From Octopus bimaculoides (Eukaryota): a DNA stretch of 64,000 nucleotides. The notes beneath the pieces are model-generated. The model saw only the letters and a program-made list of their open reading frames with translations. It made no database searches and had not been told where the DNA came from. This document shows, piece after piece, positions 15,251 to 43,700 of the stretch. The first letter of the stretch is position 1; every line of letters begins with the position of its first letter. The stretch spans positions 66,544,544 to 66,608,543 of the forward strand of contig NC_068992.1 of assembly GCF_001194135.2 (NCBI RefSeq). Reading direction: 5' to 3'. The position numbers and the translations under genes were made by a program.

Positions 15251-15395
15251 NNNNNNNNNNNNNNNNNNNNNNNNNNNNNNNNNNNNNNNNNNNNNNNNNN
15301 NNNNNNNNNNNNNNNNNNNNNNNNNNNNNNNNNNNNNNNNNNNNNNNNNNNNNNNNNNNNNNNNNNNNNNNNNNNNNNNNNNNNNNNNNNNNNNN

Positions 15396-15432
<37 letters not shown>

Positions 15433-18400: not shown

Positions 18401-19409
18401 TTACATGTTTAGTTAAAATTAGTTGATATTGAAAGAATTTTTTTTTCACTGGTTTGGACATGAGCAGTGTCATATCTAATCTGTATCATTATCTGAAGCT
18501 GTTAATGATCTTAGTGGTGTGTAACAAGTCATGGTCCGATAACATCCAATTATTTCAGCCAATTTGACATTTGAAAAATACTCTTTACATTTAAACCAGC
18601 CATATCTGGTCAAGATATTTTACCTGTTTTATGTTCATGCTGGCAGTGCCCCAGCATGGCCACAGCCTCAGGGCTGAAACATACACTAACTGGATCCAGC
18701 CTCTCACACCTACCTTACAATGTCACATTCAACAGAGTGATCTGCTAAAGGCTTAAAGAATCTACGTTTTTCCGATGAATCTCTTTCTTCTGTAATTCTC
18801 ACCGAACTGAATGTCTGCACTCTCTTTTATAAAACTAACTGGATTATACTATTATATACTGATACTACTCTCTGGGCTTAGTTAGTAACAACTATCTATT
18901 GAGTAAACTATTTTCCTCCTCCTCCTCTTCACACTTAAAGAGTGTAACAACCAATGATATCACCATCATCATAACCAAAGAATAACTGAAACTCAACTGA
19001 GATTATAAAGTGTTTTTTTTTATTTTACAAAATTTATATTTTTGTTTTTACATGTTACATTCTGTACTTGAGATTTTTTTTAATGCTCTAAGTTAAAACA
19101 CGGTAAAATTTATATCTAATTAATGAAATATAACCCAATCTATTAGAATTCATATGGCTGTTTCTATCTCTCTTTCTAAGCAGTTGTGAAGAGAATTTTT
19201 GCTTTCATGTAGAACTGAAGAAGTATTTTCAAAGTTAGATATAAATAGGTTCAGTACAAGAAACAAGAGAGCAATGTTTAAATGGCTGAGGACTTGTAGT
19301 CAACAGTTGATTCAATATATTTTACACTTTTACAGTAAAGATGATGTTGGGTGAAAATGTGTTGAGCTCCAAGTTGATAAAGTAATCTTTCAGCCTGCCC
19401 CAACTGCTG

Positions 19410-19453
<44 letters not shown>

Positions 19454-20268
19454 GTACAGTGTTAACCTGTATTTGAAATGAATTAGAATCCTTTTCCTAC
19501 ACAGCCATCCTATATACATGTTTACTGAATAATTCAATTGCATTAATGTTTTCTTTCAATCCACTCTTCTGCTCCAGTTAGATAAATTAAAAGCAATAAA
19601 ACAAAGCAAACAGAAAAAAAATTGTGCTTGTACTTTTTTCTTTATGTCTGCTCTCTTTCTCCAGAAATATATCATGATTTTCTCCTTTAAATACAAAACT
19701 TAACCCAGCTGGGTTTATGTAAATCCCATAGAAACAACTTGAAATTTTCTTTCTTTCTTTCTTTTATTTCTTCTTTCCTTTCTTTCTCTCTCTCTCTCTC
19801 TCGTTTTTTTCCCTTTTTCTTTCCTCCTTCCTTTCTTTTTTTTCTTTCTCTCTTCCATCCATCCATGGGTTGGCCCCCATGGATAGGATTGATATTTTTG
19901 ATTTTCTGATTAGTTTTCTCCATGTGCCATGCTTCCAAATTTTTAACTATTTTTATCTGTCTAATCTAGGTAACAGAATTAGCACCAATGCGTTCATTAC
20001 TCGAGTGTCTCAAAGAACCTTCTCTACGTTTGGATTTTCCTGTTTTGCGACTTTGTGACTTTTCCCAGCAAATCTGTGATGGAATGGCATATTTAGAAAG
20101 CAAACGTCTCATTCACAGAGATCTAGCAGCGCGCAACATTTTGGTGTTTAGCAAGAACAAGGTAAGCTTTTCTCACATATATTTCCAATCAAAGAATATC
20201 CTATTTTCCTATCATTTATTAGTATAGCAATAATATCTTTAGTCCCTTCACCCATTAACCTTTAGAAG

Positions 20269-20322
<54 letters not shown>

Positions 20323-21089
20323 TTTTAAGTATATATATTATAAAAATATAATTATAATTAAGGGCGCTAGAATGCCAGCTCCTATATTTGACATCTACTT
20401 CTAGTGTATAGATGCTGGCATTTCAGCGTCTTTAATCATAATTATAATTATATACTTAAAAATTAATTTTACCAATATGATTGTTTTTTTATACACTAGT
20501 CACTGATATAATCATTTTAATGATTATATCCTCAATTATATATATATCTTGCATTGGGAATGTTACAATAATTCTGCCTAACTCTCAAATTTTCTTCACG
20601 ATCTCAGTTTGTGTTGTTTTATTTCCTCTACAGGTAAAGATCAGTGACTTTGGATTGTCTCGAGCCCTTGGAGTAGGCAAAGACTATTACCAGAGTAATT
20701 TTACCATCAATCTAAAACTTCCAATTGCTTGGTGAGTCAGTCCTTTGATGATGTTTTTTTATATGTTTTGATTTGAAATAGATTTAGGCTTATCGTTCAG
20801 ACTCAGAAATGCTGTATCTTTGCCAGAGAATTATTGCTTTAGCATTAAATTGTAATTATAAAGAACTTGCTTCAGTATCAGGTTTAAGTTTATTTTTGAT
20901 AGTTCTATGTTGGTGGTTGCAGTGTGCTCCATTTCAGTGTGATAAAGTATAACACAGAGTCTTTACTATGGACAGGCTTTTCAAATATTTCTTAAGACTT
21001 TAATAGTAATCCCTGATTGTCGTCAGTGTTTCCTCTTAGTGCCTGTCCATGTGCCCACATTTTACAACTATTACACAAATGAAAAGCAT

Positions 21090-21166
<77 letters not shown>

Positions 21167-24100
21167 TAATCTCATCATTGGAGTCACAAGGCTATGAGAT
21201 AATGCATTATTAATTTTAAATAATGCAAATAAGCATTATATTCAATAGAATAATCTGAATGCTAAAGGGTTAAATTATCAACAGAAATTACTTTCTGAGA
21301 GAAAGCTTTCACAAGGACACCAGGCAATGATAGGTCTTGTGTAAGAGACACAGTTGTCAAAATATTTTTAAACAAATACTACTTTTTGTTTTTTTGACAC
21401 TATTATTAGTAAGCTGTTGACAGCCCTCTAAAAGTCATTTAATGTCCATTTCTTTTTTTTTTGTCATGTCAGAGGTAGGCTTGTCCAGTTAAATGTGCAA
21501 TTATTATATTAACTGAAGGAAAAGTATAGTGACAATATCCAGTATGAAATTTTAATTGTTGAGGAATTGTTATAAAAGTCAAGAGGGTATGAAAACAAAA
21601 TTTATGGAATGAAACTAAATGATAGATTATATATACTTAAGGTCTATAATATTTGTCTGCTTTGAGGGATCATATAACATTTCTTTTGAGGGAGTCATTT
21701 GGCTAATTATTGCAGATTAAAATGTGTAGTACCATTGGTTGATTGGTACATGTTGTGTTGAGAAATGACTGGCATATAGGAAAAGAAAGTTGTATATGTG
21801 TTGAGAATCACTTAATTTAATCGAATGAATTTTTCTTTTATTGAAAAAAAAAATTGTTTTGAGAACAATATATTTTTCATGACCATTCATCACATGATTT
21901 TTTAAAACATTTTCTCCATGCTTGGACATGGGGTCACACGATCTCTGTCTTCTGAGAAACCTTTATTGTCATCAGATGTAATACTTCCTTGAAGATTTTC
22001 CTTCCCAGTTTTTATCTGGTTACTGTGTTTTCAGAACCCTAACTTCTGCTGCTCATTTGGCCCTCCTAAGTAACACTTCCTGTTGACAACTTGTAAGAGG
22101 TCTTCTGACTACTTCTAGAGAGCCATCCAGACATTTGAAAGTATTCATTCCCTGTCTGTTTTTCATGCCAATTTCTGACCCATACCAGCATGGACAACAG
22201 ACATTACATGATGATGATTATGATGATGTATCTTCCTTCCTTTTTTGTCAATAAGAGAATGATCTCACTAAATCTCTTGTGGACTCCTGATTTATATTGG
22301 ATATGAACTTAACAATTTCTACAACCACCTATTCTACAAATTGAACATGGACTCTTCCAAGACAGCCATACAATTCAGTATTCTTTCTGCTGTATCATGT
22401 TTTTGCCAGATTTACTTTCAGATCTTGTGATTCTAGACTCCCATGCATCTTTGGAACTTTGCCTCTGATTCTGCTGTGGGAACTTGCCAATCAGCATTGT
22501 GGGTACAGCCATGCTTGAACTGAATTGTTCCTGAACATGTCCATCTGTAGTTATTTCTTTCTAAAATATCTCCTGTGTCCTGACAATGATACTGAAACAC
22601 TTGTTCAGATATTATCACCTGCTCCCTCCTCTTGCTCCAGCTGCTTTCTCTGTCATTCTACATTAATGATTCTTTCAACTGTCAACAGCTGCTGATCCTT
22701 CAGTTGGATCCACTTGCTGTTGTCCCCCCCTCCTCCTCCTCCCCTCTTTCCTTCATGCATTCTCATCATTTATTAACCTCTTCTTGTGGCATTTCCTCCT
22801 GACATCTGTGATGGGAATTACACACCACTTAGCATTCCAAAGACATCCCCATTCTCAACAACACAATTTCATCATCTGAAACACATTCTCTGATCTGCTC
22901 TTCATGAACCTCTTTCTCCTTCAATCCTTGCTAGTTAAGTGTCTCGCTAGTCTTTTAGTTACCCAATATTCTACCTGGCACCATTCCTCTTTCCATTTTT
23001 TCCAGGCCTGTCTTACTTTATCATTCCACCTCCTTGTCACTTACTGATTCGCTGGAACCTTCCCTCTCCCCACACAGACTTGGTCTATGGGTTGCAGTGG
23101 TTTGTCTGTAAATCATCCCTGGACTTAAGAGCTAAGAGACTTAACTCTCTGCCTCATTAAAGATGTTTCTCTTTGTCAATTAAGTGTTGATTAATGTGCG
23201 TGCACACACACACACACACACACTCTCACAATCATATATACGCATGCACACACACACACACAGTCCTGTTTGTATTAGTATACTTCCTTTCAATGTGTTT
23301 TTACATACTTGTATTATCTTAAGTTTGTGTAGCTGTGTATGCTTGAGAAGAACATTTTGTGTTTTGCAAGTGACAAGAGTTATTGGAAAGAATGACTGAA
23401 ATTGCAGACTTCCTTTACAACATTCTTCTCTAAAGCCTATAATTTGTGTTCATCACTCTAATTACAGGTGTGCTCCGGAGTGTATCAATTATTTGAAGTT
23501 TACATCTGCGAGTGATGTTTGGTCATATGGAGTTACTCTTTGGGAAATGTTTACATATGGATTCCAGCCTTGGGCTGGAATGACTGGACAACAGGTTGGT
23601 TGCCACAGAATTTGAAGTTTTTTTTTTTTTTTGATTTCTTGAAAGAAAATCTAATTATCTTTAGAGAGATTTTTTTTTTATTGAAATATTGTATCTTTTT
23701 GATGTATTTAAAGAGTTTATATGCTCTCTGTCATATAGTCTATTTGATACAATTGAAATGAAATGGTCATCTTTGTCACCTAACAATGGCGGGGGTCACA
23801 TGATAGAGTGTACAATAAACAACTTTACAATTAATGAGAAAATCATGAAATCTGTGTTGGCATGTGTTAATTATAACCCATCAGTTACTAGAATTGCTCA
23901 AACGTTATCATTTACATTCTTCAGTGTATGGAGAGCTATTAATTTAGTTAAGATTTCCATAATAACCAGCCATGTTTAAGACAGGAATGGAAATAAACAA
24001 TATGAAAGTCCTCTAAGAAACAAGAATTTTTTTTAAAGAGGAAATTGGGATAAAATGTTAAACCATATGAGATGACTAGGTTAATTTCTCAGCCTGTCAT

Positions 24101-26070
24101 TTGACGTTTATTTTTATAGAATTTTAACCTTTTAGCATTTAAAACAGAAGCAATGACCAACACCTTTGGCATTATGTCGTACTTGAGAAGAAGACCATGG
24201 CAGATACCGGTGTCATGCAAATGGCACCCAAGCTGGTGGCATATAATAGTACTCATCACACTCTCGGAGTGGTTAGTATTAGAAAGGGCTTCCAGCTGTA
24301 GAAAACCATGTCAAATCAGACTGGAGTCTGGTGCAGCCTTTCAGCTTACCAGCCCTGGTCAAACCATCCAACGGATGTTAAATGATGTGATGATATCTGG
24401 CCAAAATATTCTACCTGTTGTATGTTTAGACTGGCCAGTCCCTGAGGTTGTTGATCGAAGATAAGTTTTACGTTAGCTTAGAGCATAGTTTGTCTGGGTA
24501 AGATGATGGAAAATTAGCAGAAACATAAACTGCAGGATAATGTTAGGAACATTTTCAAGGAATTTTGGAATAAATTAGATTGTTTTTTTTGTTCTTCTAC
24601 TAAAGATCCTTGAAGCTGTTGATCAGCCAAATTGTCAGCGCTTAGATCGACCTGATCTTTGCCCCAGAGAGTACTTTGACCTAATGAAATCGTGTTGGGA
24701 AGATGACCCAAAGGATAGGCCTACATTCAGTGAAATATTTTTGAAACAGCCAAAGGTAAGTTTATTTACCTTTCCAAGAATTTTCAAAATGATTTGACCT
24801 TTATTCTTAAAAGTTTTCTCCCATATAATTGATCCACTCTTTCTTAGTGAGCTATTCTTCATGATAATGTTCTTGTGTTTTTTGTAGATGCGCCCATCTC
24901 TGGCAAAAGCAGTTGCTGATTCTCCAGAAACCTCTGCTGGTGATGAATATTTAGTTTTTAAGGCTTACGACACCATTGTTATTTTAGATAAGAAGTAAGT
25001 GCCTCCAATTTCTAATTCCTTTGCTCTGTTAGTTTCTGACCATATTTTCTCCAAATTTTTTTGCTGTTTTCTGTTCAGTCTTCTTACAACTGTTTTATAG
25101 TTTTTCAGCTTTTAATTCCTAAATTTTCAAAATTCTTACAATGTAATTTCTGAAAAAATTTAGTACTAAAGTAATTTAAAATTTAAAATAAAGAATAGTA
25201 TACTGCAGTATAAGTTTACAATGTGTAATGAGAAGTTTGTTTCCTAACCACATGGTTTGTGAGAAAGGTTAGTTTTATTCTACCAATGCATTGTGTGTGT
25301 GCCATGCCCCGAGTTGTTGGGGTTTCAGGGCACAGTGGCAATATGCTCATACATTGTCCCTTGCCACCGATGCTTTTGCCAACTCAGCTACAGCTATCCC
25401 ATCCAGTGTGAAAGGAACCACGGGGTCAGAGCAATAGTTTCTGTGCTTGCTCGATGGAATGGTGGTATCATGTTGCCTCTCAACGATGATGGCTGAATGC
25501 CTCTAAGCTGGAATCACAGTCGGACCCAACTTGTTTTCCAAAAGCATTTCAACCTCAAGGTGCATGCCAGCCCATCACGTTTGCATGATGAATGTCATCA
25601 TCGCTGGCAGAATTGGCTTTCTGCGGGTCTTACTTCAGCACTGTCCCACCTGACTTGTTCAAAGAGATTGAGTTGAACAAAATTGCTTGCATGTGACTGT
25701 GGCTTACTGCTTGGAGTGACGTGCTTAGTAGAGCAGCTGTGTGTGTGTGTGTGAAGAGGGAGAGAAATACATACATGCATACAGACTACTCCATAGAGCA
25801 TATATATTACAGACACACATATAGTATATTTGTTTAAAATTTGTCAAAAAAATTAACTAGGTAATCTTTCCAGCTGTATTACATATTTGCGTTAATCTGT
25901 TGAACATCTTTCTGGATTAATTTCATTATCATATTTCAAAAGTAAACAATTCTGTGTTGGTGACCGTTTCTGAATTATCCTGAGACACATTTTAGGGATT
26001 TCTGCTCTAGATAAATAAGGAAACAACCTTCAGTGGTGCCCCAATGATAGAATGGTTTTCATTTCTCTCT

Positions 26071-26107
<37 letters not shown>

Positions 26108-28339
26108 TAAAGCTTTTAAAACAATTTTGTTGGTGTTGAACCCTAGAGAACATGTGTAACTAGCAACTAAACGATTGCAATTTTGACCTAGATTCAATTT
26201 TTTTTATCCAGCAAGACCACACATGCTCTCTGAGTGTTTAGATATCATTCAATATCATGGAAATATCATCTGTTGGTGTAGATTGTCATCACACTGGGAA
26301 AATTACAAAATATTCCATAGCTTGTATAAATTAAAAACACACACACACGCACACTTCTTTTAAATTTAAGAAATTAACTGGGCAGTCTCTGCAACTGTGT
26401 TAGATATTTGTATAGACCTGGTGAACATCTTCCTTGATTAGCTCATTATCAAGTTTTCATATTTTTATAAATTTCATGTAAACTGTTGATAATTCATTTA
26501 TGTTTAACTAAATTTGTTTTCTTCGTCTCTTTGCAGTCCAGAAAATGCCCCTTCAAAGTTCTGGAAAGGTGCATTGGATACAGGCAAATGTGGGCTCTTT
26601 GATGCTACAAAGACAGTTGCGTTCATTGAACCCAAGACCAGCCCCATTGAGTTACCAAGAACTTCTCTATCGAGAAAGGGTAACCAACTTCAGTTCAAAA
26701 CTTTACTCTCAATTTCTACCTTCTGCCCTTCCTGTTTTTCTTAAACTTAGCACTTGCATATTGTAATCGTAAGATTGGTTGAAACTGCATTGATGGTGTA
26801 TTACAGCTGTAAAATAGATTAAACTATATATTACAACAGTATGGCCAGATGTTGTTTCAAACATAATCATTGAAAATAAATAATCTCACTTTTCTAGGAG
26901 GATATCTACCAATCACACAACGGTGAGGAATGTTGGTGTTTAGCAATAATAAATTAGTATGATATTGAAAAATAGAAAATTGATCTAAGGAAAAGATCCT
27001 TTATGGTATGGCATCAAAGATAATGTAATTAGATATCAAATGAATGATGGATATTAATCCTGTTTATAAGCTGTAGTACATTTAATATTACTGACCTGGA
27101 AAGTGTGTGACTAATGGCCTTAAATATACAGTATTCAGTTATGAATAAGTGGCTTAGATAAAATTAATTAGCCTGGCCTGATGATGAATTGAACTTGAAA
27201 AGAGATGGTTGGTTGTTTAATTAAAACTATTACTTAAGCAAAACTTTAAATTTTCATCTGTTGAAGGGTTATTTAATGAAATTGCATTGGAGTCTAGATG
27301 TCGGAGAAAGTAATGTGTTGTAGGATCATACAAACTAAAACATCTTGCTTAAATAGATGTTAACCTGCTGCTGCTTTGATGAGGAGTAGAAACTAATCTT
27401 GCAGCATTTTACCCATCTTTACATTCTGATTTCAAATGCCACCAGGGTTGACTTTGCCTTTTATCCTTTCACGGTTGATGAAATAAGTATCAGTTGAGCA
27501 CTGGGGTTGATCTAATCCAAAATTGCTGGCCTTGTGCCAAAATTCGAAACCATTATTATAATTCATTATTTAAAATAGAAACCTGGTGGCACGTAAAAAG
27601 CACCATCTGAATGTGGTTGATGCCAGGTCTGCCTGACTGGCTCCCCATGCCGATGGCACGTAAAAAGCACCAACCGATTGTGGCTGATGCCAGTAGCCCC
27701 TGACTGGCTCTTGTGCCAGTGGCACATAGAAAGCACCATCCGAACATCATTGATGCCAGGCCCACCTGACTGGCTCCTGTGCTGGTGGTACGTAAAAAGC
27801 ACCCACTACACTCTCGGAGTGGTTGGTGTTAGGAAGGGCATCCAGATCAGATTGGAGCCTGGTGCAGCCTACTGGCTCTCCAGACCTCAGTCAAACCATC
27901 CAGCCCATGCCAGCATGGAAAACGGACGTTAAACGATGAGGATGAATTAAAAACCATGTTATAATTCATTGCACATTTAAAAAAGCATCCACACCCACAC
28001 AGTGCTGTTACTTGTTTTTTTTTTTTTTTTGTTAGCATGACTTGGTAGCATGTGCAATGGTTTTAGGTGTCCATGTAGTCACAAGCTCACATAGACAATC
28101 TCTTGGCCAAACAATACTTTGACTGAGTGTAACATCCCGGATGTAACACGTAGAAGAGGAAAGAGAGCATTCCAGCAGAAAAGAGCTGCTATTTAATTTA
28201 TTGAGGTTAAGTGGACAAAGTTAGTTAACCTAGGTGGGGTTTGAACTCAGCAGAGAACTGCAATAAATGTCACGAAGCATCTTAGTTGATACTTTAAAGA
28301 TTCAATCTGTTTGTTGTCTCACTATACACACACACATGT

Positions 28340-28380
<41 letters not shown>

Positions 28381-31300
28381 CAAGTATGTGTATCCTCATT
28401 GTTTGACGTCCACCTTCCATATATACACGTGTGTATTATATATATAGATATATATATGTGTATGTGTGTGTGTGTCTGTCTTAGTGAGACAGCAAACAGA
28501 TTGAATCCTTAAAGTATTAAATAAGATGCTTTGTGACATTTATTGCAGTTCTCTGCTGAGTTCGAATCCCACTTAGGCTAACTAACTTTCATCCACTTAA
28601 CCTCTGTGTGTGTGTGTGTGTATAAAACATGACCGTTGATACTTAATTTCCCTGTCTGTTAGAAGAAGTTAGTTGTTAGCCAGAGCTTATGGCAGTGTTT
28701 TGTTGCTTTTAGTTTCTGTTCAGTCTTTCACAACAAGCAACAACCACCCAGCTCCATAGAAAAAGTGTAGAAGTGAATCAAAAGACTTTGAAGTCACCAA
28801 AATTAGATAACGTAATGTGTTTAGATGTGACACCTTTATAGATTCAAGATTATCCTAATTGTTGAAGCCTATCTTAAATAGTGAGGTCATAAAAACCGAG
28901 CTAGATCAATCATCATGGTTCAGATGTTATCTCTGAGGAGTCTTCTGGGATGTTTAGTCCACCCCCTTACTCGTCGTACTCATGGGAGTCTTTTTCACAG
29001 CAGAAGTTCTGGTGGTTAGCCACAAAAATGAGCAAAAAAAAAAAAACCAAAAAAAAAACTATTGAATATATAAAGAAGGAAGAGTGAGCATGGAGGAACC
29101 ACTCCTTTTCCAACAGAAGAGTAAGATGTATGTATGTGTGTGTGGGGGGCGACCTGTAGAAAAAGATGATTTCATTCTAGAAGGAAAAAGGTTGACTAGG
29201 TTTGAGAAAGGCAGACAGTGTGAATGTGTAAGAAGGAGAGGAAATGTTTTATAAAAGGGATGAGGGGAGACAGGAGAAAGGGAGAACTTGAAAGTATTTT
29301 CATATAGAAAGACATTGATAATTATTGAATTATAATATTGTTAATAATAATAATAATGAGAATAATAATAACTGCAACTGTTATTATCAGAGACCTTTTT
29401 AGTGGGATGGGCAACTCCACTTGAAGAAAATTCTGAGCTCCACCTGCAAGACCATGTGTTGTTTATCTTGATGTGAGGTCACCATATCACATATGGTTGT
29501 GAGGCATGTGTCTGATGTACTCTTATCAGACAGGTAGTCATGATGGGGGTATATTGGGTTTCATATATTTGTGTCCCAGTGTCACTTTGATGGCATGTGC
29601 TACTCTCTCACTCAATAATCGTATGATAATACATAGATTCTGTGTTTTAACTCATTCACCATTAATGTAACGAGTACAACAAAAAAAATGTTCTGTAGCC
29701 ATTAGAATCAGTTGATATCGGTTAATAACAGTTAGGATGAATGTAATTGTGAAGAGGTCATTAAATCAGACCCAGTGTTGTATAAAGCTGTTGCTTCTGT
29801 TTAGCCTTACATTAACTGACTGAGGATGAAAGACATAAATCTGTTCCTCACCATCCATAGATCCAGACGGGTATTTTGATGTAAAGGAGGTAAAACTGCA
29901 TTTTCTTGCACGTTGAGAGACTGCTTAATGGCTGCTCTCTCATTGGTCTCATACGAAATTAAACAGAACTAAATGACAATGTAGACAAGTCCTTTATAGT
30001 GCCGACTTGTCGTCTTGCTAATGTGGTCAGACAAGAAGAGCTGCTTGAAAGTGTGATGACTTGAGAATTGCAACAGTGAAATTGGTTAGTTTCTGCTTTT
30101 CGTGATGGAAATATAAATACTGAACATGAAAAAGATTAGGTTTATCCGTTGTTTACGCTATATATTAGTTTTAAAATTTTCTAACATAGAAATGTACAAA
30201 ATTAAATGCAATTAGCATTGTTGATTGTGCTAGGAATACAAAGAATTTGGAGTATTGAAATGTGAAAATAGCTTTAACTTTATATCATCCTGCTATTTCT
30301 TTTTATTTTTATACTAAAATACTGCAACTTTTCTAATTAAAAAATCAAACGAATGAAATTAAAAATAGTATAAAGGAAATATTTTTATTTTTGCTAATTT
30401 CAAATTCTTTTTATAGAATCCAGTCGGAGATCAGGCAGGAAACTTCGTGCTGACATGATCAGTGGACCAAAGGACGATCTTCGACACACAGGTCATATTG
30501 GTTATGATGGAGCAGTTTTTGGTGACATACCTTTCATTGGGGATGGTAAACTTCCAGTAAAAGTAGCAAGCCCAGGTTAGTACTTGGTTCTATAAAATCA
30601 GCTGCTGTTGTTTAGTAACTTTGATGTCTGGCTTCTGTGCTTAAACACTGAAGTTTAAGCACTACAGACAGTATTTTGGCTACAGTCTCTATGTAGCACT
30701 ATATCATTGTTTAACCTCAGGTCAGCTCTGATCAAGCTGACCTATAATGAAAAGCCTTCCTGCCAAGAATACTCAGTCTTTTATTTAAATATATCTAGGA
30801 CTAGGTTATCTAATGCATCTTTTTTTTTTTTTTTTGTATATATAGATGATAGATTGCAATTTAATGGTGACTTAGCTGCTATTTTATGAGCTAGTTGGAT
30901 GGCCACATAGCAGAGCTAGAACTGATCTGTTTAATGGAGTTGAATAATAATTGACTCTACAAGACTTCTAATATTGATTTCTTTCTTCACCAAAAGGTCA
31001 CATATTATTGTGTAATAATATATTTTTAGCTTGATGAATTGAAATTGTTTCACCTGGGAATCTGCATATCAACTTCTTACTCTTTGCAGTTGACAACTAA
31101 CAACCTAACATATTTCTAACTCTAAAGTCAAGCTGTTGTCTGAATATTCAGAATTGCTTAAAAAAAACAAAGATTACTTAATTACTAATGAACATTTTGA
31201 AGTGGTGTCATTGTTTAACATGTTAAATATATTTAGACTATTATTTATTTACTATTTATGTTGTCTATATCGTGTTTATCAGTTATTATTGATGTGTTGT

Positions 31301-33866
31301 TTGATATTGGCAGGTAAATTAACTGAAGAAAGTCGTGGTGCATCGATATCATTACCGAGATTTGCAAGAGAAAGTCCGGCTCATGATCGCATCATTAGGA
31401 ATAGTCAGTCTGATATATCCCTGAATCAAGATGGATCTCGACCAGGAACTAATGGCTATGGCAACACATGGTTAGTAATCCAGTCTTTGTCTTTGTTTTG
31501 GGTGCAACCAACTTTGTTACCAACGTCATTAATGAGGAAGATATTCAACTGAGATGGAAGGCAGTTTGGCTTTGTACAAGGACGGAGTACCTCTGGTGCT
31601 CTCGTGCTAATGAGACAACTATAGGGAAAGTACTTAGCTAGGGATAAAGCACTTGACCAATCTTTTGTTGATCTGAAGAAGGCATCAGTCAGGGTTCCAC
31701 ATTCTGATGATTGCTAAGAAAACTAGGAAGATATGAAGGGCTTCCAAGAGTTGGGGACGCTATGCACAGAGGTGCTGCCAGTAAGGTGACAATCTTGCTC
31801 TCTCACCCATTCAGATTTAGACTGCATACATAAAGGGACATAATGCAGTCCAGCACTCAACTATCACCTTGTCTGATAAGCATCATCATCATCGTTTAAC
31901 GTCCGCTTTCCATGCTAGCATGGGTTTGGAGTTTATTGTGAAGAAAAGAAGAGGTCTGGTGTTTCAGTATTATTTATTTAGTTGTGAATGCTCTGAACTG
32001 GTTTTGTCCAGTTCTATATTTCACTTGGTCTTATTTAATGCCTTACTGTATGGAGAGTTCTCATTTATCTCCCTTCCTAAACTAGGCCGTTAAGAAGAAA
32101 ACGTACTTAATGCTTCTTACAAGGAGCATTTAAGAATTTATTTTTTGACAATTATATAACTACTAGCTTAAGCTAGTAGTTAGCTTTTAAGCAACCGACC
32201 AAGATCTGCAAACAGATTTTGTTGTAATTGCTTCCCAATGATGATCGTTGCAAAAAATCGTGTAAAAAAAATCGCTGAAAACAATTGCAGTAATGAAAAC
32301 ATAGGAATCCAAAATTTTAGGATTGCAGGTCTGGATTCAGCTTGGAATGTTCTTAATTTACTCACTGAGTTAGCCTTTAGATTACAAGATCAGAACAGAT
32401 TGCTAATTAATGTAGCAGAGTGTCACACTGGGTTGCCGCATCCATATAGAATTTACATTATTGGTTTTGAAATCAGTACTGATTGTTTAAATCGATTTAA
32501 TAATATTTTGTATATAAATTATTTATAGCTGGAAGTGATCTTTTCAAACTAGATTGTCTAAGTATTAGCTATTCTTGCATGAAGAAATATCAAATATTGT
32601 CAATTTATAGAGGAAGGATTTGTGGTGCAAGTTGTGATACCAGATAGTTTGGAGTTTCCCTCAGTGTTGACTGTTTTCATCATCATCGTTTAACATCAAT
32701 TTTCCATGCTGGCATAGGTTTGACGGTTTGACTGGGGTTTGGGAAGCCAGGAGGCTGCACCAGGCCCCAATCTGATCTAGCAGAAATTGTGCCTGTGTTC
32801 ACCAGACTTAAAAAATGGACTATTTCCCACCAACACTGTGAACTTGATGATAAATTATTTATTTTTTTTGTTTCAGGTCTAGTCGGGATTCTCTTGAGAG
32901 TAGTTCCACCATTCGAACTGAAGGTTCTGGTGGAGGTTATCAGGATATTGATGAAGAAATGGATTTTGATTTTGGTGATTTTAAAGTTCCTGATCTAACT
33001 GTAAGTTTTGAAAATTTACCAACAAACTTGTTTTTCTTCTAATTTTTATATTTGAAACATTTATAGTGTTCATTGTAACCCTAGGTAGTAAGTTTTTGGC
33101 AAACCAACTTTGTCACTCATTAATCATAACTGATTGTGGTGACCTCAATTATTTTGCTAATGGAGTTAATTGGGTTCATTTTCATTGATAGATTCTGATC
33201 AGAAAAGATGAAGTGGGTGGCTTTAATGCTAGTAGTGTGTAGAGTAGTAAATCTCTCTTGTCATTATTTATTAACCCTGAACTACTACTACAAATATAAC
33301 TGGACCATTTCCTTGCAAAAACTAGAAAGTATCTGTGAAATAAATAATCTGTCGGCTGGGAGTGGGGAGGGGGTATAGCAAATGTAAGACTTCAGGATAT
33401 TGATGTGAAACAATGAAATAACTTCCATCAAACACAAGCTCTGCTGCTGCTACTGCTCTTACTTTACCTTAACCACTCAGCTATTTATTTCTTACTTTAA
33501 TGGAGATGTGTAACTAAATTATCAATGAGCCGTTCTGCTCAGTTCTGTTGGTGTGGTCATGGTTTAAAGACAATCAAAGAATCATTCATTCAATGTTTTA
33601 TCTGTGATAGTTATTGTGAAGATATCATCATAAGATTGGGAATTTGTACCTATGGTTTGTATTTTACAGACCCAACACTTCTTCATTGAGCAGTCAGTGG
33701 GAGTCTATACTAAAGCTTGCTCACTCTCCTATTATAATTATTATATAAGAAATAAAAGAAAAACAAGTAAAAAAACCCCATTATTCCTCTTATTATTATG
33801 CAAATAATTATCTAATTGAAAACTGTTTTGTTTGATATAGAAACAAATTGGTCAACATTAAATTTA

Positions 33867-33954: not shown

Positions 33955-34449
33955 CATAAACTGCATAAAATGCATGTTTTTATTCATTTATTTTTGTATG
34001 TTTTAGACTTCACTTGATTTTGGTCCTTCTCTTATGGATGAAGTTATGAAGGCTCTTGAAGATAAAAAGGATGAAGATATTACACGTAGCTTGTCAACTT
34101 CAAAAGACACTTCCCCTGTCGTTGAAGAGACAAAGGTAGCACCTGTTGAAACTACGGCTGATGAAGAGGAAGAAAGCACAACACTCTCGCCCAAAGATAC
34201 AAGTCCTCTTATTCCTCCTCATGTTCCTGTAAGTCAACTTTCTTCTAAGGAACTCCATTTCAGAAATTAGTTTCTGTTCTCTCTCTTATATCTTCAAGAA
34301 TTAACATGATGCTTTTTAAAGGTTTAGGATAGCTGCAAAATAATGGCAAACTAACCCAATTTCATAATTATGGTAAAAGCTTGTCTCGTACTGAATCTTT
34401 TTTTATATAGGAAAGGGCTGTACACACATACACTCTCTCTCTTTCTTTC

Positions 34450-37731: not shown

Positions 37732-40700
37732 TTACTGGTTTATATTATTGCCGATAATCATTCACTGCTTGCATAGAAATGAGACTTGGAGTTCTATGTC
37801 TCAAAGTTTTGGCAAATGCTAGCTTTTTGGCTTGGACAAAGATTAACACACCTCATTAATGGGTCAATCTTTCTAATCCACATTCTTTAATCTTCATTTT
37901 CCTTCACCTAATTGTTTTTTTTTTTTTTTACCTATTAATCTTCTTAAACATCTCAATTTTACCTTTTCTTTCTTTTGGCATAATTTCTTGTAAATTTCTT
38001 TTCTCCTCAGCATGTCTTCAATATCACTTCTGACCTTACAATTCCATTTCAGTTGTCTAAAACAATAGAATAGTTTTGGATTTCTTAAAAATTAAGATGA
38101 CATAAAAAAAAAAATTGTAAAAAAGTAAAACCAGAGAATTGAAGTCTTACAATAAGGACAGTGCTTCACCATTGCCACTATGGTTGCACTAAAGAACCAA
38201 AAATTCTCTATGAACTCAATTGAAAATCACTTCTCTATTTGCAAAATCATTCCTACCAATTCCTTCACACAATTTTGCTGTGAATTGATAAGCAAATCTA
38301 GAAAAATTGATTTGTTTTAATTATTTAAATTTAATTTCTTTTATTAAAGAAAGCTTCTCTAATATTTTTCACATTTAAAAGTGGGGTAAAGATAAAAGGA
38401 AAATCAACATTTTTGAATGAGAAACCAATTGTCAATTTATATTGATGAGAATAATGGTTTGAATATCAATAGACTCTGGGTAATTATTGTGGGATTATTG
38501 TGGGCTGATAAAAACCCCAAAAGTAGTGCTAGTGTTGTGTAGTAAGCATGTGTGTGTACCTTAGTATCCTTGTGTTTTCTATTTCAGGAAACTCCCCCCC
38601 GGGAGCCTAAATCTGAAGGAAAGAAGCAAGCAAAAGTAAAACCTATGTCTGCTCATGATGAGAAAATGATTAATAATGCCATAGCTTTAGCAAATGAATT
38701 TGCGATGCAGTGCAATAAAATGAATATGGACGATGATCAACTGAGTCCAAAATCTGAAACCAGTTCAGACTCTCCAAAGCTCATCCAAAAATTGAAGATA
38801 TCAATGAAGCGGAGTCCTAAACAGGAGCGCAAAAAGACATTTACCGAAGAGATTGCACTGAAAGCCGACCTTGATGAAGATCTTCCACCAGAGTCTCAAG
38901 AAGCTTACAATATACTTGTAATGAAAGGTGCAGGGAAAGAGAGCTCTCCCTCATCTCCAGCTGTAGAATCTCTCTCACAAGAACTAACTATTAATACTGA
39001 ATTATCCCCAAACAAAGCAGAACCAGAATCCAGCTCATTTTCCTCTACTGCTACCCTTCCCACTGCTACAATTACAAGAAAAGACTCAGACATAAAGCCA
39101 CTGAGCAAGTCCCGGGCAGCTATGTCTAAAATTGAGCCACCACCTATACCCAAACCACGTCCAGAACACAGAGTAGAACCTACCCCTCGCATCGAGTCAA
39201 TTACAAAGCCAGAAATAACTAAACCGGAATTGCCTCCCAAACCAGATATTGTTCCACAGATAGACCAACCAAAAGAAGCGCCGCCTCTTCCTGAAACTCC
39301 TCCTAGGACTGATCATTTGTCAAGAAGTGAACCAAAATTTGACTACCCAAATAGAACTGACTCTTCCATCAGGTCAGAGTCTCAAAGTAAACCAGAGATT
39401 TTGCCCAAAACAGACCTACCGAAAATGGAAAGCAAAATTGAACATCCTCTGAAATCTGAGCACCCTTCCCGTATCCCCCACCCCAGCAAAATTCCCCCTC
39501 CAACTAAGATTGAGTATTCTTTTAGAAAAGAGTCTCCACCTAGATTAGAACGATCCGAATCTCAACAACGGTCAGAACCATTACCCAGAATGGATGTCCC
39601 TCCACCACCACCCCCTACTGCTATTCCTAAAGCAGAACCTGTCGTTGAGAGAGCACACAGTGTCGATAGAGAGAACGGACATCATACTTTGAGTCTTGAC
39701 TCGTTTTCCTTTAGTAAAGAGTCTTCTCCAGCATCCAGTTCTGAGAGGTCTGTTGAGGATCGAGATATGGAGACAGAATCAAGAGATAAGCTAGGTGGAG
39801 GTTATGATAGGAGATCTGATAGCCACTCAGAGAGATTTGGCATTTCATCACCTAAGATGAGTTTCGATGAAGAATTCGCAGAACCTTCACCTCGAGAAAT
39901 TATGAGTAAGCTAGCTCGAGAGAGCCGAATTCGGCGTTCAATGGATCACCAACGAGCTATGTCCACTGAGAGTATGGATCACTCTCATATCCGGAATTTA
40001 AGGGAACCACAAGGAATTCCAACTAAAGTTGTTCCAACTGCAAATGGTGAAGATGAAGAAGTTGATACAAATCCTTTACGAATGCTGCGTGGCGGTGCCA
40101 TTCCTATTCGAGGAGGGCGTGGACAAGGTATGAAACCCCCATCTCTTCCGTTGCCTAGGTTACAGTTTACTAGTCCAACTGTTGTTGTTACTTGTACTGC
40201 TACCTCTACTACTACTTCTACAACAACAATTTCTCAGCATGCAGCCATCAGTTTGTCTCGGGGCTACAAAAGTGACATCATTGATTCAATGCCTCCTCAT
40301 CTTGTACCACGACGCACGCCTGTGGTACCGCCCCGCACCTACAGCAGTTCTAGTGAAAGCATGCCTGCCCTAGATAAATGTTTCCCGCCACAGTTGCCAC
40401 CGCGTAAGCCGTTGAGGCCAGACGAGCTGCTCAACGCCAAGCCACGGGCCAGGAAGTACCCCCTATTGCGCCATAGCGACTCTTCTTACTCCAGAGTTTC
40501 CACTTCTGTATCCATCCACTCTTCTGCCTCTTGCTCTGCTGCAACCACTGTGATGACCACTACTTCCACTACCACTACCACCGCCACCGCCACCACTACC
40601 TCTCCAGCCAAACCCCGGCCCCTCTTTATTAACTGTTTGCATGATATTCCTTCTCTCCCACCAGCTCCACCACCCCCAATAGACTTTGATGAGAACGATG

Positions 40701-43700
40701 CTGATGATGATGACGACGATGACAATGTGTTTGTTCCTTGCCAAACAGACTACTGCCCCATGCCGACAACAGCCCCACCTCCTCCCCCTCCTCCCCCATC
40801 GCCACATCCATTTCCAGCGTCACCAGCATTGTCGTCATCAGCTTCACCAACACCACCAACCTCCTTATCTCCTCCCATTTCAACCCATACCCTAGTCCCA
40901 CCCCTTCATGACTCTTCTTCTAGAGAAGCGTCTAGCATGATTTCAGGACAGTCTGGGTGTTCCACTTTCCCACGTAGGAGGTACCGTTTACAAGTGGTAC
41001 AGTATAATTTAGAACAGTTGGGATTCTATAACCATCAAGACCCATTTTGGTGTAAAACTGGGAATGTTTCGAGGTGGAAATACTCTGATAATGAAAGTTC
41101 CGAAGATCTCTCCCCAATGTCTGCCAACTACAAGACCTCCGACAGTGTCAGCTATGAAGATCTGCTCGAATTTGCTTTAGATAGGTAAACAACAAGAGAA
41201 TCTTTGGCTTTGGAAGATTTTTTTTCTTTTAATCAGTTTCTTACTTCTTCCAGTCTTTGCTAATTGTTAATGATTCTTTTAAAAACAACAACAAAAAAAG
41301 CACAAGTTATAATTATTTTGCTATGTTTGTTAGGGAAAAGTATTAAAAAGTTCTTTGGTTTTCACATCCTTATGTTTCAATTTAAGAACAAGGTTTATAT
41401 TAAAACAAGTTTATTTAACGTTTCCATCACTTTGGAGATCTTTAAAGCTTTTGGGTTCAGTGATTTTTAACAGAGAAACTGAATGTAGAATTTCAAATTG
41501 TTTGCACACACACACACACTACACACTAGTTAAGTTTGTGTATGTATGTATATATATGTGTGTGCACACACATTAGTTAACTAATATATGTATAGATAAG
41601 TGTATGTGTATATATATGAGTAAATGTAAGGATAAGCAAGTTAGACGGGTCAATATACAAATTAATATATTTAATAGAAAAAATTTATATTTGCTTAGAT
41701 ACAAAAATGTCCGATCTTACACAGAATAGAAATGATATCAAGAATTAAAGAAAAGTGTTACAAATCCAATTTAACTCAGCCCCTTTAATTCTTGATATCA
41801 TTTCTATTCTGTGTAAGATCGGACCTTTTCGTATCTAAGCAAATATACATTTTTTTCTATTAAATGCATTTAATGGTTTTTGTATATCAACTTGCCTGTC
41901 CCTCCTACATTTACTCCTCTACCCACTCATGTTTAAATATCTTGAGCATTACTAAGTGTATTCTATACGGAGAATATTCAATTCTCATCTATGAACTATT
42001 TTTATAGGTAAATATACGTGCGTGTGTGTGTGTGTGTGTGACTAAGAAAAACTTAGTTAACTTTATGTAGCTTTGTATTTCCTTGATATGGAACTAATTA
42101 CATACACACAGTTATCTATATTTTAAGTAAATGCGGACAATTATCTGTTGGTTAATTAGCACACATGCACATTTAAATCATTTATGTCAGAAAACACCCA
42201 ACTGGTGTGGTAGGATTTCATCAGTATTTTCAGGAACAATTCTTGGAATATAAATAGTTTCTTTAATTTGTTTCCATTACTATGGAACCTTTCTTGTTAA
42301 TCACTTCCATGATTCAATGTAAAATGAAATATTTTTAACAAAAAAATTAATTTCAATTTGCAATAGAATAATTGAGAAACAAAAATTTGAAAAAAAAAAG
42401 ACCCCAAATATTGTTCTAATTCCTAGTTCAACATTGCATTTCATTTTTCTTCCTTTTTCGATTCTTCAGGTAGAAACTGAAATTGGTTCCTGAATTGATT
42501 TCAGTCATCATTAATATTATTTTTATTATTAACTATTTTATTTTGTTAATTTAAACTAAGAAAATGTCTGAACTAGTTTCTCTCTGTTTTTATTAAGTTT
42601 TGAGGAACTGTTATTAGGTATTCTGCAGTTAGTATTAATAGTTTTTATAGATTCATTATTGGATATTGTATATTCTTTTGTCTCTTGTTATGTCGGTTGT
42701 TGATAGAATATTTAGATTCGTCTAGATGTTGTTGGTTTTTGAATTTCCTAATGAAACTTTTAAATGTCAAATTAGAATTATCAATTTAGTTTGAAATAAG
42801 AATATTTGAACGTTTACTCCCATTGTGTTTTGGTGGCAGATTTAAGGTGATTTAGCTCCCCTATGTATTTTTGTTGTGCCCCACATTTACGATCGTCTCA
42901 GATGGTTTTCTTGTTGTAATCAGAGTTGTGGATAGTATAATTTGATTGTTAAATTTCACATTGTTGCACTTCCTGGCTTAAACACTTCTGCAATATAATA
43001 ATATGCATAGTTAGTGCACATTGCCTGGTTAGGAATGCAGGTTTACTAGCGTATATGGTACGTGGTGGTATGGACACCACAACTAGAAACAGTTATAAAT
43101 TGTATAGCATCTATTAACTATTACAAAATGGTGTGTGTATGTGTGTGTGTGTCGTTGCTTTAGAGTTCACTTTTCCATGCTTGGATTGGGCAGACAAAAT
43201 TTGTTGAAGCAGCATTTCTACAGCTGGATGCGCTTCCTATCATCAACCGTCACCTCTTTCCAGGCAGCTTCCTATTTCCCTTTGGCTGGACACATTTAAT
43301 AGAAGACTAGACAATGAAGGACATTGCTTGTTTGACATTGTGATACTCATTTACAACTACCATGCAATGTTAACACAAGGAGTTTCACACAAAACACACA
43401 CACTCTGTACACATTTGTGTGTGTGTGTATGTGTATATCTGTGTGTGCACGCGCGCACACGCACAAACACTCACTCTACAAGAGAGTGACATACTTTTTA
43501 TAGAGATATTGTAGAATATTGTAAGCACACAGAGTTTAGGACTTCCACTGTTCACCGTTATATTAGAAGCACATAACATAGTTTGATCTCTGTTGAATAT
43601 AGAATATCTAACTCTGCAATATGTATTGATTGTTGATCACACCATATTGTTAATATTTATTAACTGGTTATTTTGTATCACCAAGTTTTAGGAAGCTATC

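What the first reader, a model, noticed from the sequence alone, without database searches (positions are those of the whole stretch)
34007..34063. Borg BD3 (septin-binding)-like motif inside an Ack-like tyrosine kinase
Seen: exon 12 begins [18 protein letters not shown], downstream of the CRIB exon. Established knowledge: vertebrate Borg/CDC42EP proteins carry a BD3 (Borg homology 3) motif, approximately LDLGPS(L/I/M)LD(E/D)VL.(V/I)M, which binds septins of the SEPT6/SEPT7 coiled-coil and follows their CRIB. The match [15 protein letters not shown] versus [15 protein letters not shown] is close by eye. Inference: this invertebrate kinase may be a Cdc42-regulated septin-binding kinase (a Cdc42 - Ack-like - septin module). 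Borgs could then share ancestry with the non-catalytic half of PR2-type kinases. I do not know of this link being described.
Basis: partly seen in the sequence, partly recalled or inferred. Interest (0 to 1): 0.88.

Follow-up and report, generated by a model that had tools for sequence, protein, structure and literature searches.

The report
Borg-type septin motif in Ack-like kinase
A cephalopod Ack-like (PR2-type) tyrosine kinase gene carries, next to its Cdc42-binding site, the same short motif that vertebrate Borg proteins use to bind septin filaments; this probably shows where the supposedly vertebrate-only Borg family came from, though septin binding itself is untested.

Summary
Window 34007-34063 (+) reads [19 protein letters not shown] and opens the 12th coding exon seen of an Ack-like/PR2 kinase gene, three exons after the CRIB exon.

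The motif is not a chance match:
- It is a conserved island ([LF]D[LF]GPSL[ML]DE[VM] plus a helix) in Ack-like orthologues of molluscs, a brachiopod, arthropods, a tardigrade and amphioxus.
- A BD3 profile built from real CDC42EP3 sequences scores octopus at 15.5 bits. The best of 12,100 shuffled decoys scores 6.8.
- Profile-profile comparison gives two colinear matches to Borgs: CRIB+BD1 (E 1.6e-14) and motif versus BD3 (E 2.5e-6).
- The amphioxus Ack kinase passes Pfam's BORG_CEP threshold and reads [16 protein letters not shown].

The residues needed for septin binding in Borgs (GPS, and the L/V/L cluster) are kept in octopus. The rival, a homologue of the ACK1 clathrin box LIDFG, fails pattern and profile tests.

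Shared ancestry with Borgs is well supported. Septin binding is only inferred. A Borg review states that Borgs have no fly or worm orthologues, and no paper in the library links Ack-like kinases to Borgs or septins. I class this as a new variant of a known kind, of good interest.

The parts
34007..34228 (+). Exon 12 as seen in the window (222 nt, phase 0 at both ends). It opens with the BD3-like motif, followed by an acidic Ser/Thr/Pro-rich tail.
   Evidence: Acceptor ttttag|ACT and donor gtaagt; frame open; model phases consistent. tblastn matches to Haliotis, Mytilus, tick and cuttlefish orthologues. An intron at the same place and phase precedes the motif in amphioxus.
34013..34057 (+). Motif core [15 protein letters not shown]: a phi-D-phi-G-P-S cap followed by an amphipathic helix.
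   Evidence: Position-by-position agreement with Borg2 BD3. BD3 HMM 15.5 bits versus decoy maximum 6.8. hhalign motif versus BD3: prob 88.7-95.2, P 2.5e-6 to 2.8e-8. AF2 places a helix directly after GPS in the Haliotis orthologue, pLDDT 77-86, inside a disordered region.
30417..30575 (+). Exon 9: CRIB motif plus Borg BD1-like extension. [28 protein letters not shown] lies at about 30458-30541.
   Evidence: Pfam PBD weak hit. hhalign to Borg CRIB+BD1: prob 98.3-99.0, E 1.6e-14 and 6.8e-18. phmmer of this exon gives 23-25 bits to Borg2 and amphioxus Ack, but reaches no solved chain annotated as a CRIB protein at E<=10 in the PDB.
31314..31470 (+). Exon 10: disordered linker (…TNGYGNTW).
   Evidence: tblastn to mollusc orthologues; splice phases fit.
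32877..33000 (+). Exon 11: acidic Tyr motif [24 protein letters not shown], directly upstream of the BD3-like motif in the protein.
   Evidence: tblastn to mollusc orthologues; splice phases fit. The Tyr/acidic island is conserved (DHEYHEISDEE in arthropods, DHEYLDLEGD in amphioxus).
5212..24755 (+). Six tyrosine-kinase-domain exons: 5212-5418, 14913-15065, 19970-20161, 20634-20731, 23468-23594, 24606-24755.
   Evidence: Pfam PK_Tyr_Ser-Thr, E 1.1e-87 on the spliced product. tblastn to orthologues. Model.
24888..26679 (+). Two exons for the SH3 domain that follows the kinase domain: 24888-24994 and 26537-26679.
   Evidence: tblastn to orthologues whose equivalent region hits Pfam SH3_2/SH3_1. 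AF2 beta-strand domain with pLDDT about 90 in the Haliotis orthologue.
38588..41184 (+). Exon 13: long Pro/Ser-rich region. Conserved islands include [60 protein letters not shown] and [18 protein letters not shown].
   Evidence: 2.6-kb open frame. tblastn to mollusc, tick and cuttlefish orthologues.
57888..58100 (+). Last coding exon: UBA domain, followed by a stop codon.
   Evidence: Pfam UBA, E 1.9e-11. Match to the ACK1 C-terminus guide.

Best explanation
The window holds most of a cephalopod Ack-like (PR2-type) non-receptor tyrosine kinase gene: kinase, SH3, CRIB, a long disordered region, then UBA. Its SAM exons lie upstream of the window. Exon 12 opens with a short linear motif, phi-D-phi-G-P-S followed by an amphipathic helix. 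This motif is the counterpart of Borg homology domain 3 (BD3) of vertebrate CDC42EP/Borg proteins. The CRIB exon carries the Borg BD1-type extension (FGDxxFxG…LP). So the non-catalytic part of the kinase contains a colinear CRIB-BD1…BD3 'Borg cassette', and this much is shown here. Inferred mechanism: as in Borgs, the helix after GPS docks on the C-terminal coiled coils of the SEPT6-group/SEPT7-group septin pair. This would tether the kinase to septin filaments, and Cdc42-GTP binding to the neighbouring CRIB would set where or whether that happens. Ack-like would then be the invertebrate Cdc42-to-septin effector, with tyrosine kinase activity attached. Evolutionary inference: vertebrate Borg genes descend from this cassette of an ancestral bilaterian Ack-type gene.
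For: Gene model and domains. Conservation: the motif occurs in nearly every orthologue that covers the region. Named taxa are Haliotis, Mytilus, Crassostrea, Patella, Sepia, Lingula, many insects, an amphipod, spiders, ticks, scorpions, a horseshoe crab, a tardigrade and Branchiostoma. Similarity to BD3: Pfam BORG_CEP hits exactly the motif at profile positions 110-126 (7 of 16 orthologue segments, best E 4.9e-5). A BD3 HMM from real Borg2 beats all 12,100 decoys for 76 of 121 Ack-like proteins. hhalign motif versus BD3 gives P 2.5e-6 and 2.8e-8, against scores <=15.1 in 59 of 60 column shuffles and 16.1 for the reversed alignment. A second, colinear match covers CRIB+BD1 (E 1.6e-14 and 6.8e-18), whereas no solved chain annotated as a CRIB protein reaches E<=10. 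Bridge taxon: amphioxus Ack (XP_019623600.1) has [45 protein letters not shown] and [16 protein letters not shown] between SH3 and UBA in one 68-kb gene. It scores 28.4 bits on BORG_CEP against a cut-off of 25, and a second amphioxus prediction agrees. The intron before the motif is at the same place and phase in octopus and amphioxus. Functional residues: GPS->AAA reduces septin binding of Cdc42EP3 (PMC4700053). L102/V105/L106 of Borg3 are required (PMC8098831). Octopus keeps GPS and has M, V, M at those three positions. AF2 puts a helix directly after GPS both in the Haliotis kinase (pLDDT 77-86) and in Borg2 (low confidence). BD3 is described as an alpha-helical domain that binds the septin 6/7 interface (PMC11698036).
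Against: The octopus motif alone is below Pfam's BORG_CEP threshold (14-18.7 bits versus 25). Borg BD2 is not detectable. Many insects have Asp or Glu at the position of Borg3 L106, so the hydrophobic face is not uniformly Borg-like. Nematodes, a flatworm and a priapulid have degenerate versions. My Borg set is CDC42EP3 only. Vertebrate ACK1 binds clathrin through LIDFG at a roughly comparable place, so a different partner cannot be excluded.
Confidence: 0.55

Rival explanations
1. The motif is the invertebrate counterpart of the ACK1 clathrin-binding box (LIDFG). It recruits the kinase to the clathrin heavy-chain terminal domain, not to septins.
For: ACK1 binds clathrin through LIDFG, a non-conventional box C-terminal to the CRIB (PMC3038647; PMC10047419). 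The latter review counts Ack kinases other than TNK1 and DACK as clathrin binders. A real mammalian ACK1 fragment reads …[35 protein letters not shown]… (P0187). By eye this shares 'DFG' and a later 'PSL…helix' with the motif, as if split by an insertion.
Against: None of 92 unique Ack-like motif windows fits the clathrin box L-phi-x-phi-[DE] or the ACK1 form L-phi-D-phi-G; the residue before phi-D-phi-G is variable (S/P/T/N/K…). The Ack-like profile does not match the ACK1 fragment (negative score). The strongest conservation lies in GPS and the helix, outside any clathrin box.
Confidence: 0.1
2. The cassette is homologous to Borg CRIB-BD1/BD3, but in the kinase the helix serves another purpose. 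It could be an intramolecular regulatory contact (with the kinase or SH3 domain, or with Cdc42-bound CRIB), or it could bind a non-septin partner. Septin binding would then be a later specialisation of vertebrate Borgs.
For: The motif sits in a linker with several other conserved islands: a Tyr/acidic motif just upstream and a basic-plus-helix island downstream. This suggests a multi-site regulatory region. Insect versions replace the Borg3 L106-equivalent by Asp/Glu. No Ack-like/septin link appears in the searched literature.
Against: The residues that are experimentally critical for septin binding in Borgs (GPS, L/V/L) are the most conserved ones in molluscs, chelicerates, Lepidoptera and amphioxus. 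From general knowledge, SEPT6- and SEPT7-group septins with coiled coils exist throughout animals.
Confidence: 0.3
3. Chance resemblance of a short acidic/hydrophobic peptide to BD3, with no biological meaning.
For: The match is only about 15 residues, and the octopus sequence alone is below Pfam's gathering score.
Against: Deep conservation. Decoy and shuffle controls. A second colinear match in CRIB+BD1. The amphioxus intermediate passes the Pfam threshold. The intron position is conserved.
Confidence: 0.02

Closest known systems
Vertebrate Borg / CDC42EP1-5 proteins (Pfam BORG_CEP PF14957): CRIB, BD1, BD2, BD3
   Same: The order CRIB+BD1 then BD3 is the same. The BD3 core is shared: D-phi-G-P-S-phi-phi-D-E-V-phi..phi. 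GPS and the L/V/L-equivalent hydrophobic residues are kept. A helix is predicted to start right after GPS. In amphioxus there is also the PPKPPRLH stretch seen in shark Borg2.
   Different: Borgs are small non-catalytic proteins said to be vertebrate-only (PMC5134998). Here the cassette is internal to a protein of well over 1,400 residues (the model from the window alone is already 1,478) with SAM (in orthologues), kinase, SH3 and UBA domains. BD2 is not detected. The octopus motif is below the Pfam threshold. Septin binding is untested.
Vertebrate ACK1/TNK2 clathrin-binding motif LIDFG
   Same: Same kinase family, and a short motif in the disordered region C-terminal to the CRIB. It shares 'D-F-G'.
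   Different: The Ack-like motif lacks the leading Leu and does not fit the clathrin-box pattern in any of 92 windows. The ACK1 segment does not match the Ack-like profile. ACK1's CRIB lacks the BD1-type extension.
Yeast Gic1/Gic2 (CRIB-containing Cdc42 effectors that bind and bundle septins)
   Same: The same logic: a CRIB protein that links Cdc42 to septin filaments. Borg reviews cite them as functional analogues of Borgs (PMC5134998; PMC8098831).
   Different: No sequence relationship was tested or is claimed. Gic proteins are not kinases.
Drosophila Ack-like (PR2/DPR2), the founding PR2-type kinase
   Same: The octopus gene is an orthologue of proteins named 'activated Cdc42 kinase-like' or 'tyrosine-protein kinase PR2'. 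Dipteran members carry the motif in the forms FDQGPSLMDEMEHVF and FDFGTSLLDEMDFMF.
   Different: The D. melanogaster protein itself was not retrieved. The literature searched gives DPR2 only a CRIB, with little known function (PMC3101793).

Membership tests
[quoted passage not shown] | Tyrosine kinase domain followed (not preceded) by an SH3 domain | tested here: met
   Pfam PK_Tyr_Ser-Thr, E 1.1e-87. The SH3 exons lie after the kinase exons. SH3 Pfam hits and an AF2 fold in orthologues.
[quoted passage not shown] | CRIB motif C-terminal to the SH3 domain | tested here: met
   [18 protein letters not shown] in exon 9. The Pfam PBD hit for octopus is weak (18.5 bits, cut-off 21.3). PBD matches all 16 orthologue segments at E<=1 (best E 3.2e-8), and the first segment exceeds its cut-off (22.8 bits).
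[quoted passage not shown] | C-terminal UBA domain; N-terminal SAM domain | tested here: inconclusive
   UBA is present (E 1.9e-11). SAM exons are not in the window, although the cuttlefish and Haliotis orthologues have SAM_TNK.
[quoted passage not shown] | Best database relatives are Ack-like/PR2 proteins | tested here: met
   120 top hits are named 'activated Cdc42 kinase-like' or 'PR2', with 517-878 bits.
Borg / CDC42EP family (Pfam BORG_CEP) | CRIB with the BD1 extension (…HxG..G..FGDxSFL..Y..LP) | tested here: met
   hhalign prob 98.3-99.0, E 1.6e-14 and 6.8e-18 over 45-52 columns. The octopus exon scores 23-25 bits to Borg2, and no solved chain annotated as a CRIB protein appears at E<=10.
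Borg / CDC42EP family (Pfam BORG_CEP) | BD3 core with GPS and the hydrophobic L/V/L cluster | tested here: met
   Octopus [12 protein letters not shown] versus Borg2 [12 protein letters not shown]. Profile tests. Key residues from PMC4700053 and PMC8098831.
Borg / CDC42EP family (Pfam BORG_CEP) | Pfam gathering score (25 bits) for BORG_CEP | tested here: not met
   Octopus 14-18.7 bits. Tick 22.1 bits and moth 13.4 bits. Only amphioxus Ack passes, at 28.4 bits.
Borg / CDC42EP family (Pfam BORG_CEP) | BD2 (…PVLKNAISLP…) | tested here: not met
   No BD2 alignment in hhalign. The amphioxus BORG_CEP match starts at profile position 17, after the BD2 core.
Borg / CDC42EP family (Pfam BORG_CEP) | Small non-catalytic protein made only of CRIB plus BD1-3 | tested here: not met
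   The cassette is internal to a kinase gene, between the SH3 and UBA exons, in octopus and amphioxus.
Borg / CDC42EP family (Pfam BORG_CEP) | Binds SEPT6/SEPT7 coiled coils | not testable with these tools
   No multimer modelling or binding assay was available.
Clathrin-box motifs (L-phi-x-phi-[DE]; ACK1 variant LIDFG) | Leu at position 1, hydrophobic at positions 2 and 4, acidic (Gly in ACK1) at position 5 | tested here: not met
   0 of 92 unique Ack-like motif windows fit either pattern. The Ack-like profile does not match the ACK1 segment.

The most novel reading that the evidence does not exclude
The Borg family, described as vertebrate-only with no fly or worm orthologues, descends from a CRIB-BD1…BD3 cassette. 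That cassette has sat inside Ack-like/PR2 tyrosine kinases since at least the last common ancestor of protostomes and chordates. In invertebrates the Ack-like kinase is itself the Cdc42-controlled septin-binding effector, placing tyrosine kinase activity on septin scaffolds.
Probability: 0.4. Interest if true: 0.82.

Novelty: new variant of a known kind. Interest (0 to 1): 0.7.

Why it matters
The Borg review says Borg genes are found only in vertebrates, with no orthologues in yeast, worms or flies, and takes this as late emergence (PMC5134998). It names this as one reason so little is known about them.

The data here point to a source for the two functionally assigned Borg modules, CRIB(+BD1) and BD3. 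That source is the non-catalytic region of Ack-like/PR2 kinases, which flies, molluscs, chelicerates and amphioxus all have.

If the motif binds septins, three things follow:
- Invertebrates gain a Cdc42-to-septin effector that had been thought missing.
- Septin filaments gain a resident tyrosine kinase.
- The poorly understood Drosophila Ack-like gene gets a concrete hypothesis that is testable by genetics.

It would also prompt a fresh look at ACK1's LIDFG region as a possible degenerate remnant of the same element.

Tried and rejected
- **Exon-only search.** Searching the protein database with the 75-residue exon alone returned a single 67-residue fragment. It was uninformative.
- **First gene model.** My first model joined the CRIB exon directly to the motif exon through an alternative donor at 30556. 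It stayed in frame but was wrong. Orthologue-guided tblastn revealed two intervening exons.
- **Representative search input.** Substrings of fetched orthologues were accepted instead.
- **Unavailable papers.** Teo et al. 2001 (ACK1 clathrin motif) and Sem et al. 2002 (DPR2/DACK) are not held. I could not see how those authors aligned LIDFG with DPR2.
- **Combined bait.** Other Borg paralogues and non-mammalian ACK1 sequences were not obtained.
- **Representative search output.** It gave 818 hits, but only the top 150 (>=92 bits, all Ack-type) are visible. It therefore could not show whether stand-alone Borg-like proteins exist in invertebrates, or where vertebrate ACK1 ranks.
- **PDB searches.** Sequence searches with the CRIB exon and with the motif found nothing relevant.
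- **ACK1 by-eye alignment.** Aligning ACK1 as LIDFG…[insertion]…[10 protein letters not shown] to the motif is not supported by the profile test. I keep it only as a lead.
- **Shuffle artefact.** One of 60 column-shuffle controls gave an hhalign score of 127.9 over 2 aligned columns at the alignment end. I treat it as a numerical artefact; the other 59 are <=15.1.
- **Unplaced exon.** A regex scan did not place the exon or exons between exon 13 and the UBA exon.

Full report
**1. The observation**

Window 34007-34063 (+) translates to [19 protein letters not shown]. The opposite strand has a stop in that frame. The codons start immediately after a polypyrimidine tract and AG (ttttgtatgttttag|ACT). 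The frame stays open to 34228, where a consensus donor (gtaagt) follows. The window is AT-rich, with long introns.

**2. The gene**

I first used a remembered human ACK1 sequence purely as a guide. I then used real mollusc, tick and cuttlefish orthologues. This placed 13 coding exons on the + strand, with canonical splice sites, consistent phases and no stop codons.

| Exons | Coordinates | Content |
|---|---|---|
| 1-6 | 5212-24755 | kinase domain |
| 7-8 | 24888-24994, 26537-26679 | SH3 |
| 9 | 30417-30575 | CRIB |
| 10-11 | 31314-31470, 32877-33000 | linker |
| 12 | 34007-34228 | motif exon |
| 13 | 38588-41184 | 2.6-kb Pro/Ser-rich exon |

A UBA exon with the stop codon lies at 57888-58100.

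- Pfam confirms PK_Tyr_Ser-Thr (E 1.1e-87), a weak PBD/CRIB hit and UBA (E 1.9e-11).
- The best database relatives are 120 proteins named 'activated Cdc42 kinase-like' or 'tyrosine-protein kinase PR2'.
- A cuttlefish orthologue (cluster with Sepia pharaonis TNK2) is 78-97% identical across most exons, and about 47-66% across exons 11-13. The window is therefore cephalopod.
- The SAM exons of the orthologues are not in the window.
- At least one exon between exon 13 and the UBA exon is unplaced.
- My first model wrongly skipped exons 10-11.

**3. Is the motif conserved?**

Yes.

- A strict regular expression found it in 51 of 120 orthologues.
- An HMM built from those found it in essentially every orthologue that covers the region. 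Those without it are truncated fragments.
- An exhaustive profile search of 1.84 billion representatives, using the SH3-to-helix region, gave 818 hits at E<=0.001.
- Among the top 150, the motif is present wherever the region is.

Named taxa with the motif:
- Molluscs: gastropods (Haliotis, Patella), bivalves (Mytilus, Crassostrea) and a cephalopod (Sepia).
- A brachiopod (Lingula).
- Arthropods: many insect orders, an amphipod, spiders, ticks, scorpions and a horseshoe crab.
- A tardigrade.
- The cephalochordate Branchiostoma.

Trichinella, Macrostomum, Priapulus and a mite have degenerate versions. A Bursaphelenchus-type nematode kinase lacks it.

The consensus over 100 unique windows is [LF]-D-[LF]-G-P-S-L-[ML]-[DA]-E-[MV]-x-x-x-[LF]. 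D, G, P, S and E are 96-100% conserved.

**4. Is it BD3-like?**

Four independent tests agree.

- (a) **Pfam.** BORG_CEP, a curated model, hits exactly the motif at profile positions 110-126 of 128. It gives 18.7 bits (E 0.0039) for the peptide, and it is that peptide's only Pfam hit. It also hits 7 of 16 orthologue segments (best E 4.9e-5), ranking third after PBD and SH3. All of these hits are below the 25-bit gathering score.
- (b) **BD3 HMM with decoys.** A BD3 HMM from 69 unique Borg2 windows scores octopus at 15.5 bits and Haliotis at 21.2 bits. The maximum over 12,100 shuffled full-length decoys is 6.8 bits, and 76 of 121 Ack-like proteins beat every decoy.
- (c) **Profile-profile comparison.** hhalign of 64 Ack-like CRIB-to-motif segments against 119 Borg2 proteins gives two colinear hits. 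The first is CRIB+BD1 (45 columns, 51% identity, prob 98.3, E 1.6e-14). The second is motif versus BD3 (20 columns, 60% identity, prob 88.7, E 2.5e-6). The session's own hhalign tool reproduces the first hit (E 6.8e-18).
- (d) **Shuffle controls.** With the motif windows alone, the BD3 hit has P 2.8e-8 and score 44.6. The reversed Borg alignment scores 16.1. Of 60 column-shuffled alignments, 59 score <=15.1. The remaining one is a 2-column artefact.

**5. The CRIB is Borg-like too**

The octopus CRIB exon reads [28 protein letters not shown]. Arthropods have …HVGLDGAYFGDISFLGGKY..LP. Borg2 reads [37 protein letters not shown].

At the same nominal database size, the octopus exon scores 23-25 bits (E 1e-4 to 1e-3) against Borg2 and amphioxus Ack. 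It reaches no PDB chain annotated as a CRIB protein at E<=10. The remembered human ACK1 sequence was also not hit.

**6. The bridge taxon**

One hit of the representative search, P0312, is Branchiostoma belcheri XP_019623600.1, 'ack-related non-receptor tyrosine kinase-like'. Its order is SAM, kinase, SH3, then the following elements, then UBA:
- [37 protein letters not shown]
- PPKPPRLH
- [10 protein letters not shown]
- [18 protein letters not shown]

Further points on this protein:
- Its CRIB+BD1 has the Borg2 spacing.
- PPKPPRLH is shared with shark Borg2.
- BLASTP of Borg2 spans CRIB to BD3 in one alignment (E 2e-19).
- Pfam BORG_CEP passes its gathering score here: 28.4 bits against 25, residues 570-675 to profile positions 17-126. 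The precomputed annotation of that gene does not list the family.
- All exons lie in order on one strand of a 68-kb gene, with the UBA exon downstream of the Borg-like part. A second amphioxus prediction has the same layout, so this is not a gene-fusion artefact.

The intron just before the motif is at the same place and phase in the two species. Amphioxus has cacag|AAC CTG GAC CTT GGC. Octopus has ttttag|ACT TCA CTT GAT TTT GGT.

**7. Function**

What is known about BD3:
- It is the septin-binding module of Borgs, and it binds the SEPT6/SEPT7 coiled coils (PMC8098831, PMC12158496).
- It is described as a conserved alpha-helical domain (PMC11698036).
- L102A/V105A/L106A in Borg3 block septin binding.
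- GPS->AAA in Cdc42EP3 reduces septin binding (PMC4700053).

Octopus keeps GPS and has M, V, M at the three hydrophobic positions. Molluscs, chelicerates, Lepidoptera and amphioxus are similar. Many other insects have Asp or Glu at the third position.

AF2 on the Haliotis segment predicts the following:
- A well-folded SH3 domain.
- A disordered linker.
- A helix that starts at the residue after GPS, with pLDDT 77-86.
- A second confident helix over the downstream island [22 protein letters not shown].

For Borg2, AF2 also starts its only C-terminal helix right after GPS, but at low confidence.

That the invertebrate motif binds septins is therefore an inference from conserved key residues and architecture. 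It is not shown.

**8. The main rival**

Vertebrate ACK1 binds clathrin through a non-conventional box, LIDFG, located after its CRIB (PMC3038647, PMC10047419). A real ACK1 fragment reads [35 protein letters not shown]. By eye, this could be the same element split by an insertion.

The tests do not support this:
- None of 92 unique Ack-like windows fits L-phi-x-phi-[DE] or L-phi-D-phi-G.
- The Ack-like profile gives the ACK1 fragment a negative score.
- The strongest conservation lies outside any clathrin box.

A second rival remains open: the homology to Borgs is real, but the partner is different or the role is intramolecular.

**9. Novelty**

[quoted passage not shown] ACK reviews list no Borg or septin link. 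No paper in the searched library combines Ack-like/PR2/DPR2 with septin, Borg or Cdc42EP terms.

The library is incomplete, so prior mention elsewhere cannot be excluded.

**10. Verdict**

- Homology of the motif, and of the adjoining CRIB extension, to the Borg cassette is well supported (about 0.9 in my judgement).
- Septin binding is plausible but untested (about 0.55).
- This is a new variant of a known kind: a Borg-type CRIB-BD1…BD3 cassette embedded in a tyrosine kinase.
- It bears directly on the origin of the Borg family and offers a testable Cdc42, Ack-like, septin hypothesis.

Noticed in passing
window 33868-33950: A long (AT)n microsatellite interrupted by a run of 10 N (an assembly gap), about 60 nt upstream of the exon-12 acceptor. 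The intron sequence is therefore incomplete here.
   Followed up: no
window 32877-33000 (exon 11): A conserved acidic tyrosine motif lies just before the BD3-like motif: [23 protein letters not shown] in octopus, DHEYHEISDEE in arthropods, DHEYLDLEGD in amphioxus. It looks like a phosphotyrosine/SH2-type site. By eye it resembles the ACK1 stretch …YDPVSEDQDPLSSDFK… (the ACK1 part is from memory and from fragment P0187).
   Followed up: partly
window ~38630-38720 (start of exon 13): A second strongly conserved island: [28 protein letters not shown], a basic run plus a helix. It is conserved from molluscs to insects and ticks (KKKQATVKPISAADExTLDxAIAMAxE). AF2 predicts a helix with pLDDT about 90 in Haliotis. 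Its function is unknown.
   Followed up: partly
window 38588-41184 (exon 13): Further conserved islands lie in the long disordered exon: [72 protein letters not shown] and [10 protein letters not shown]. Several mollusc and cuttlefish isoforms end right after the GGRG…RRTARK stretch, which suggests an alternative 3' end inside or after this exon.
   Followed up: no
window 41185-57887: Exon 13 ends in phase 2 and the UBA exon starts in phase 0, so at least one coding exon between them is unplaced. A candidate open stretch at about 50972-51100 (…[12 protein letters not shown]…) vaguely recalls the Mig6-homology 'YYLLP' segment of ACK1, but this was not verified.
   Followed up: partly
window 1-5211: The SAM-domain exon or exons present in the cuttlefish and Haliotis orthologues were not found. 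The 5' end of the gene lies upstream of the window.
   Followed up: partly
L001 66290-66580 (amphioxus) and P0160 (shark Borg2): Amphioxus Ack and elephant-shark CDC42EP3 share PPKPPRLH between CRIB and BD3. In mammalian Cdc42EP3 the corresponding AKLPRL holds the KLP residues reported as needed for actin binding (PMC4700053). This is a possible third shared module.
   Followed up: partly
Arthropod orthologues (e.g. P0008, P0018, P0030), linker between CRIB and motif: A conserved D-x-A-P-L-L stretch (acidic dileucine-like), and PRQVVTPYKP right after the CRIB extension. Neither is evident in the octopus exons.
   Followed up: no
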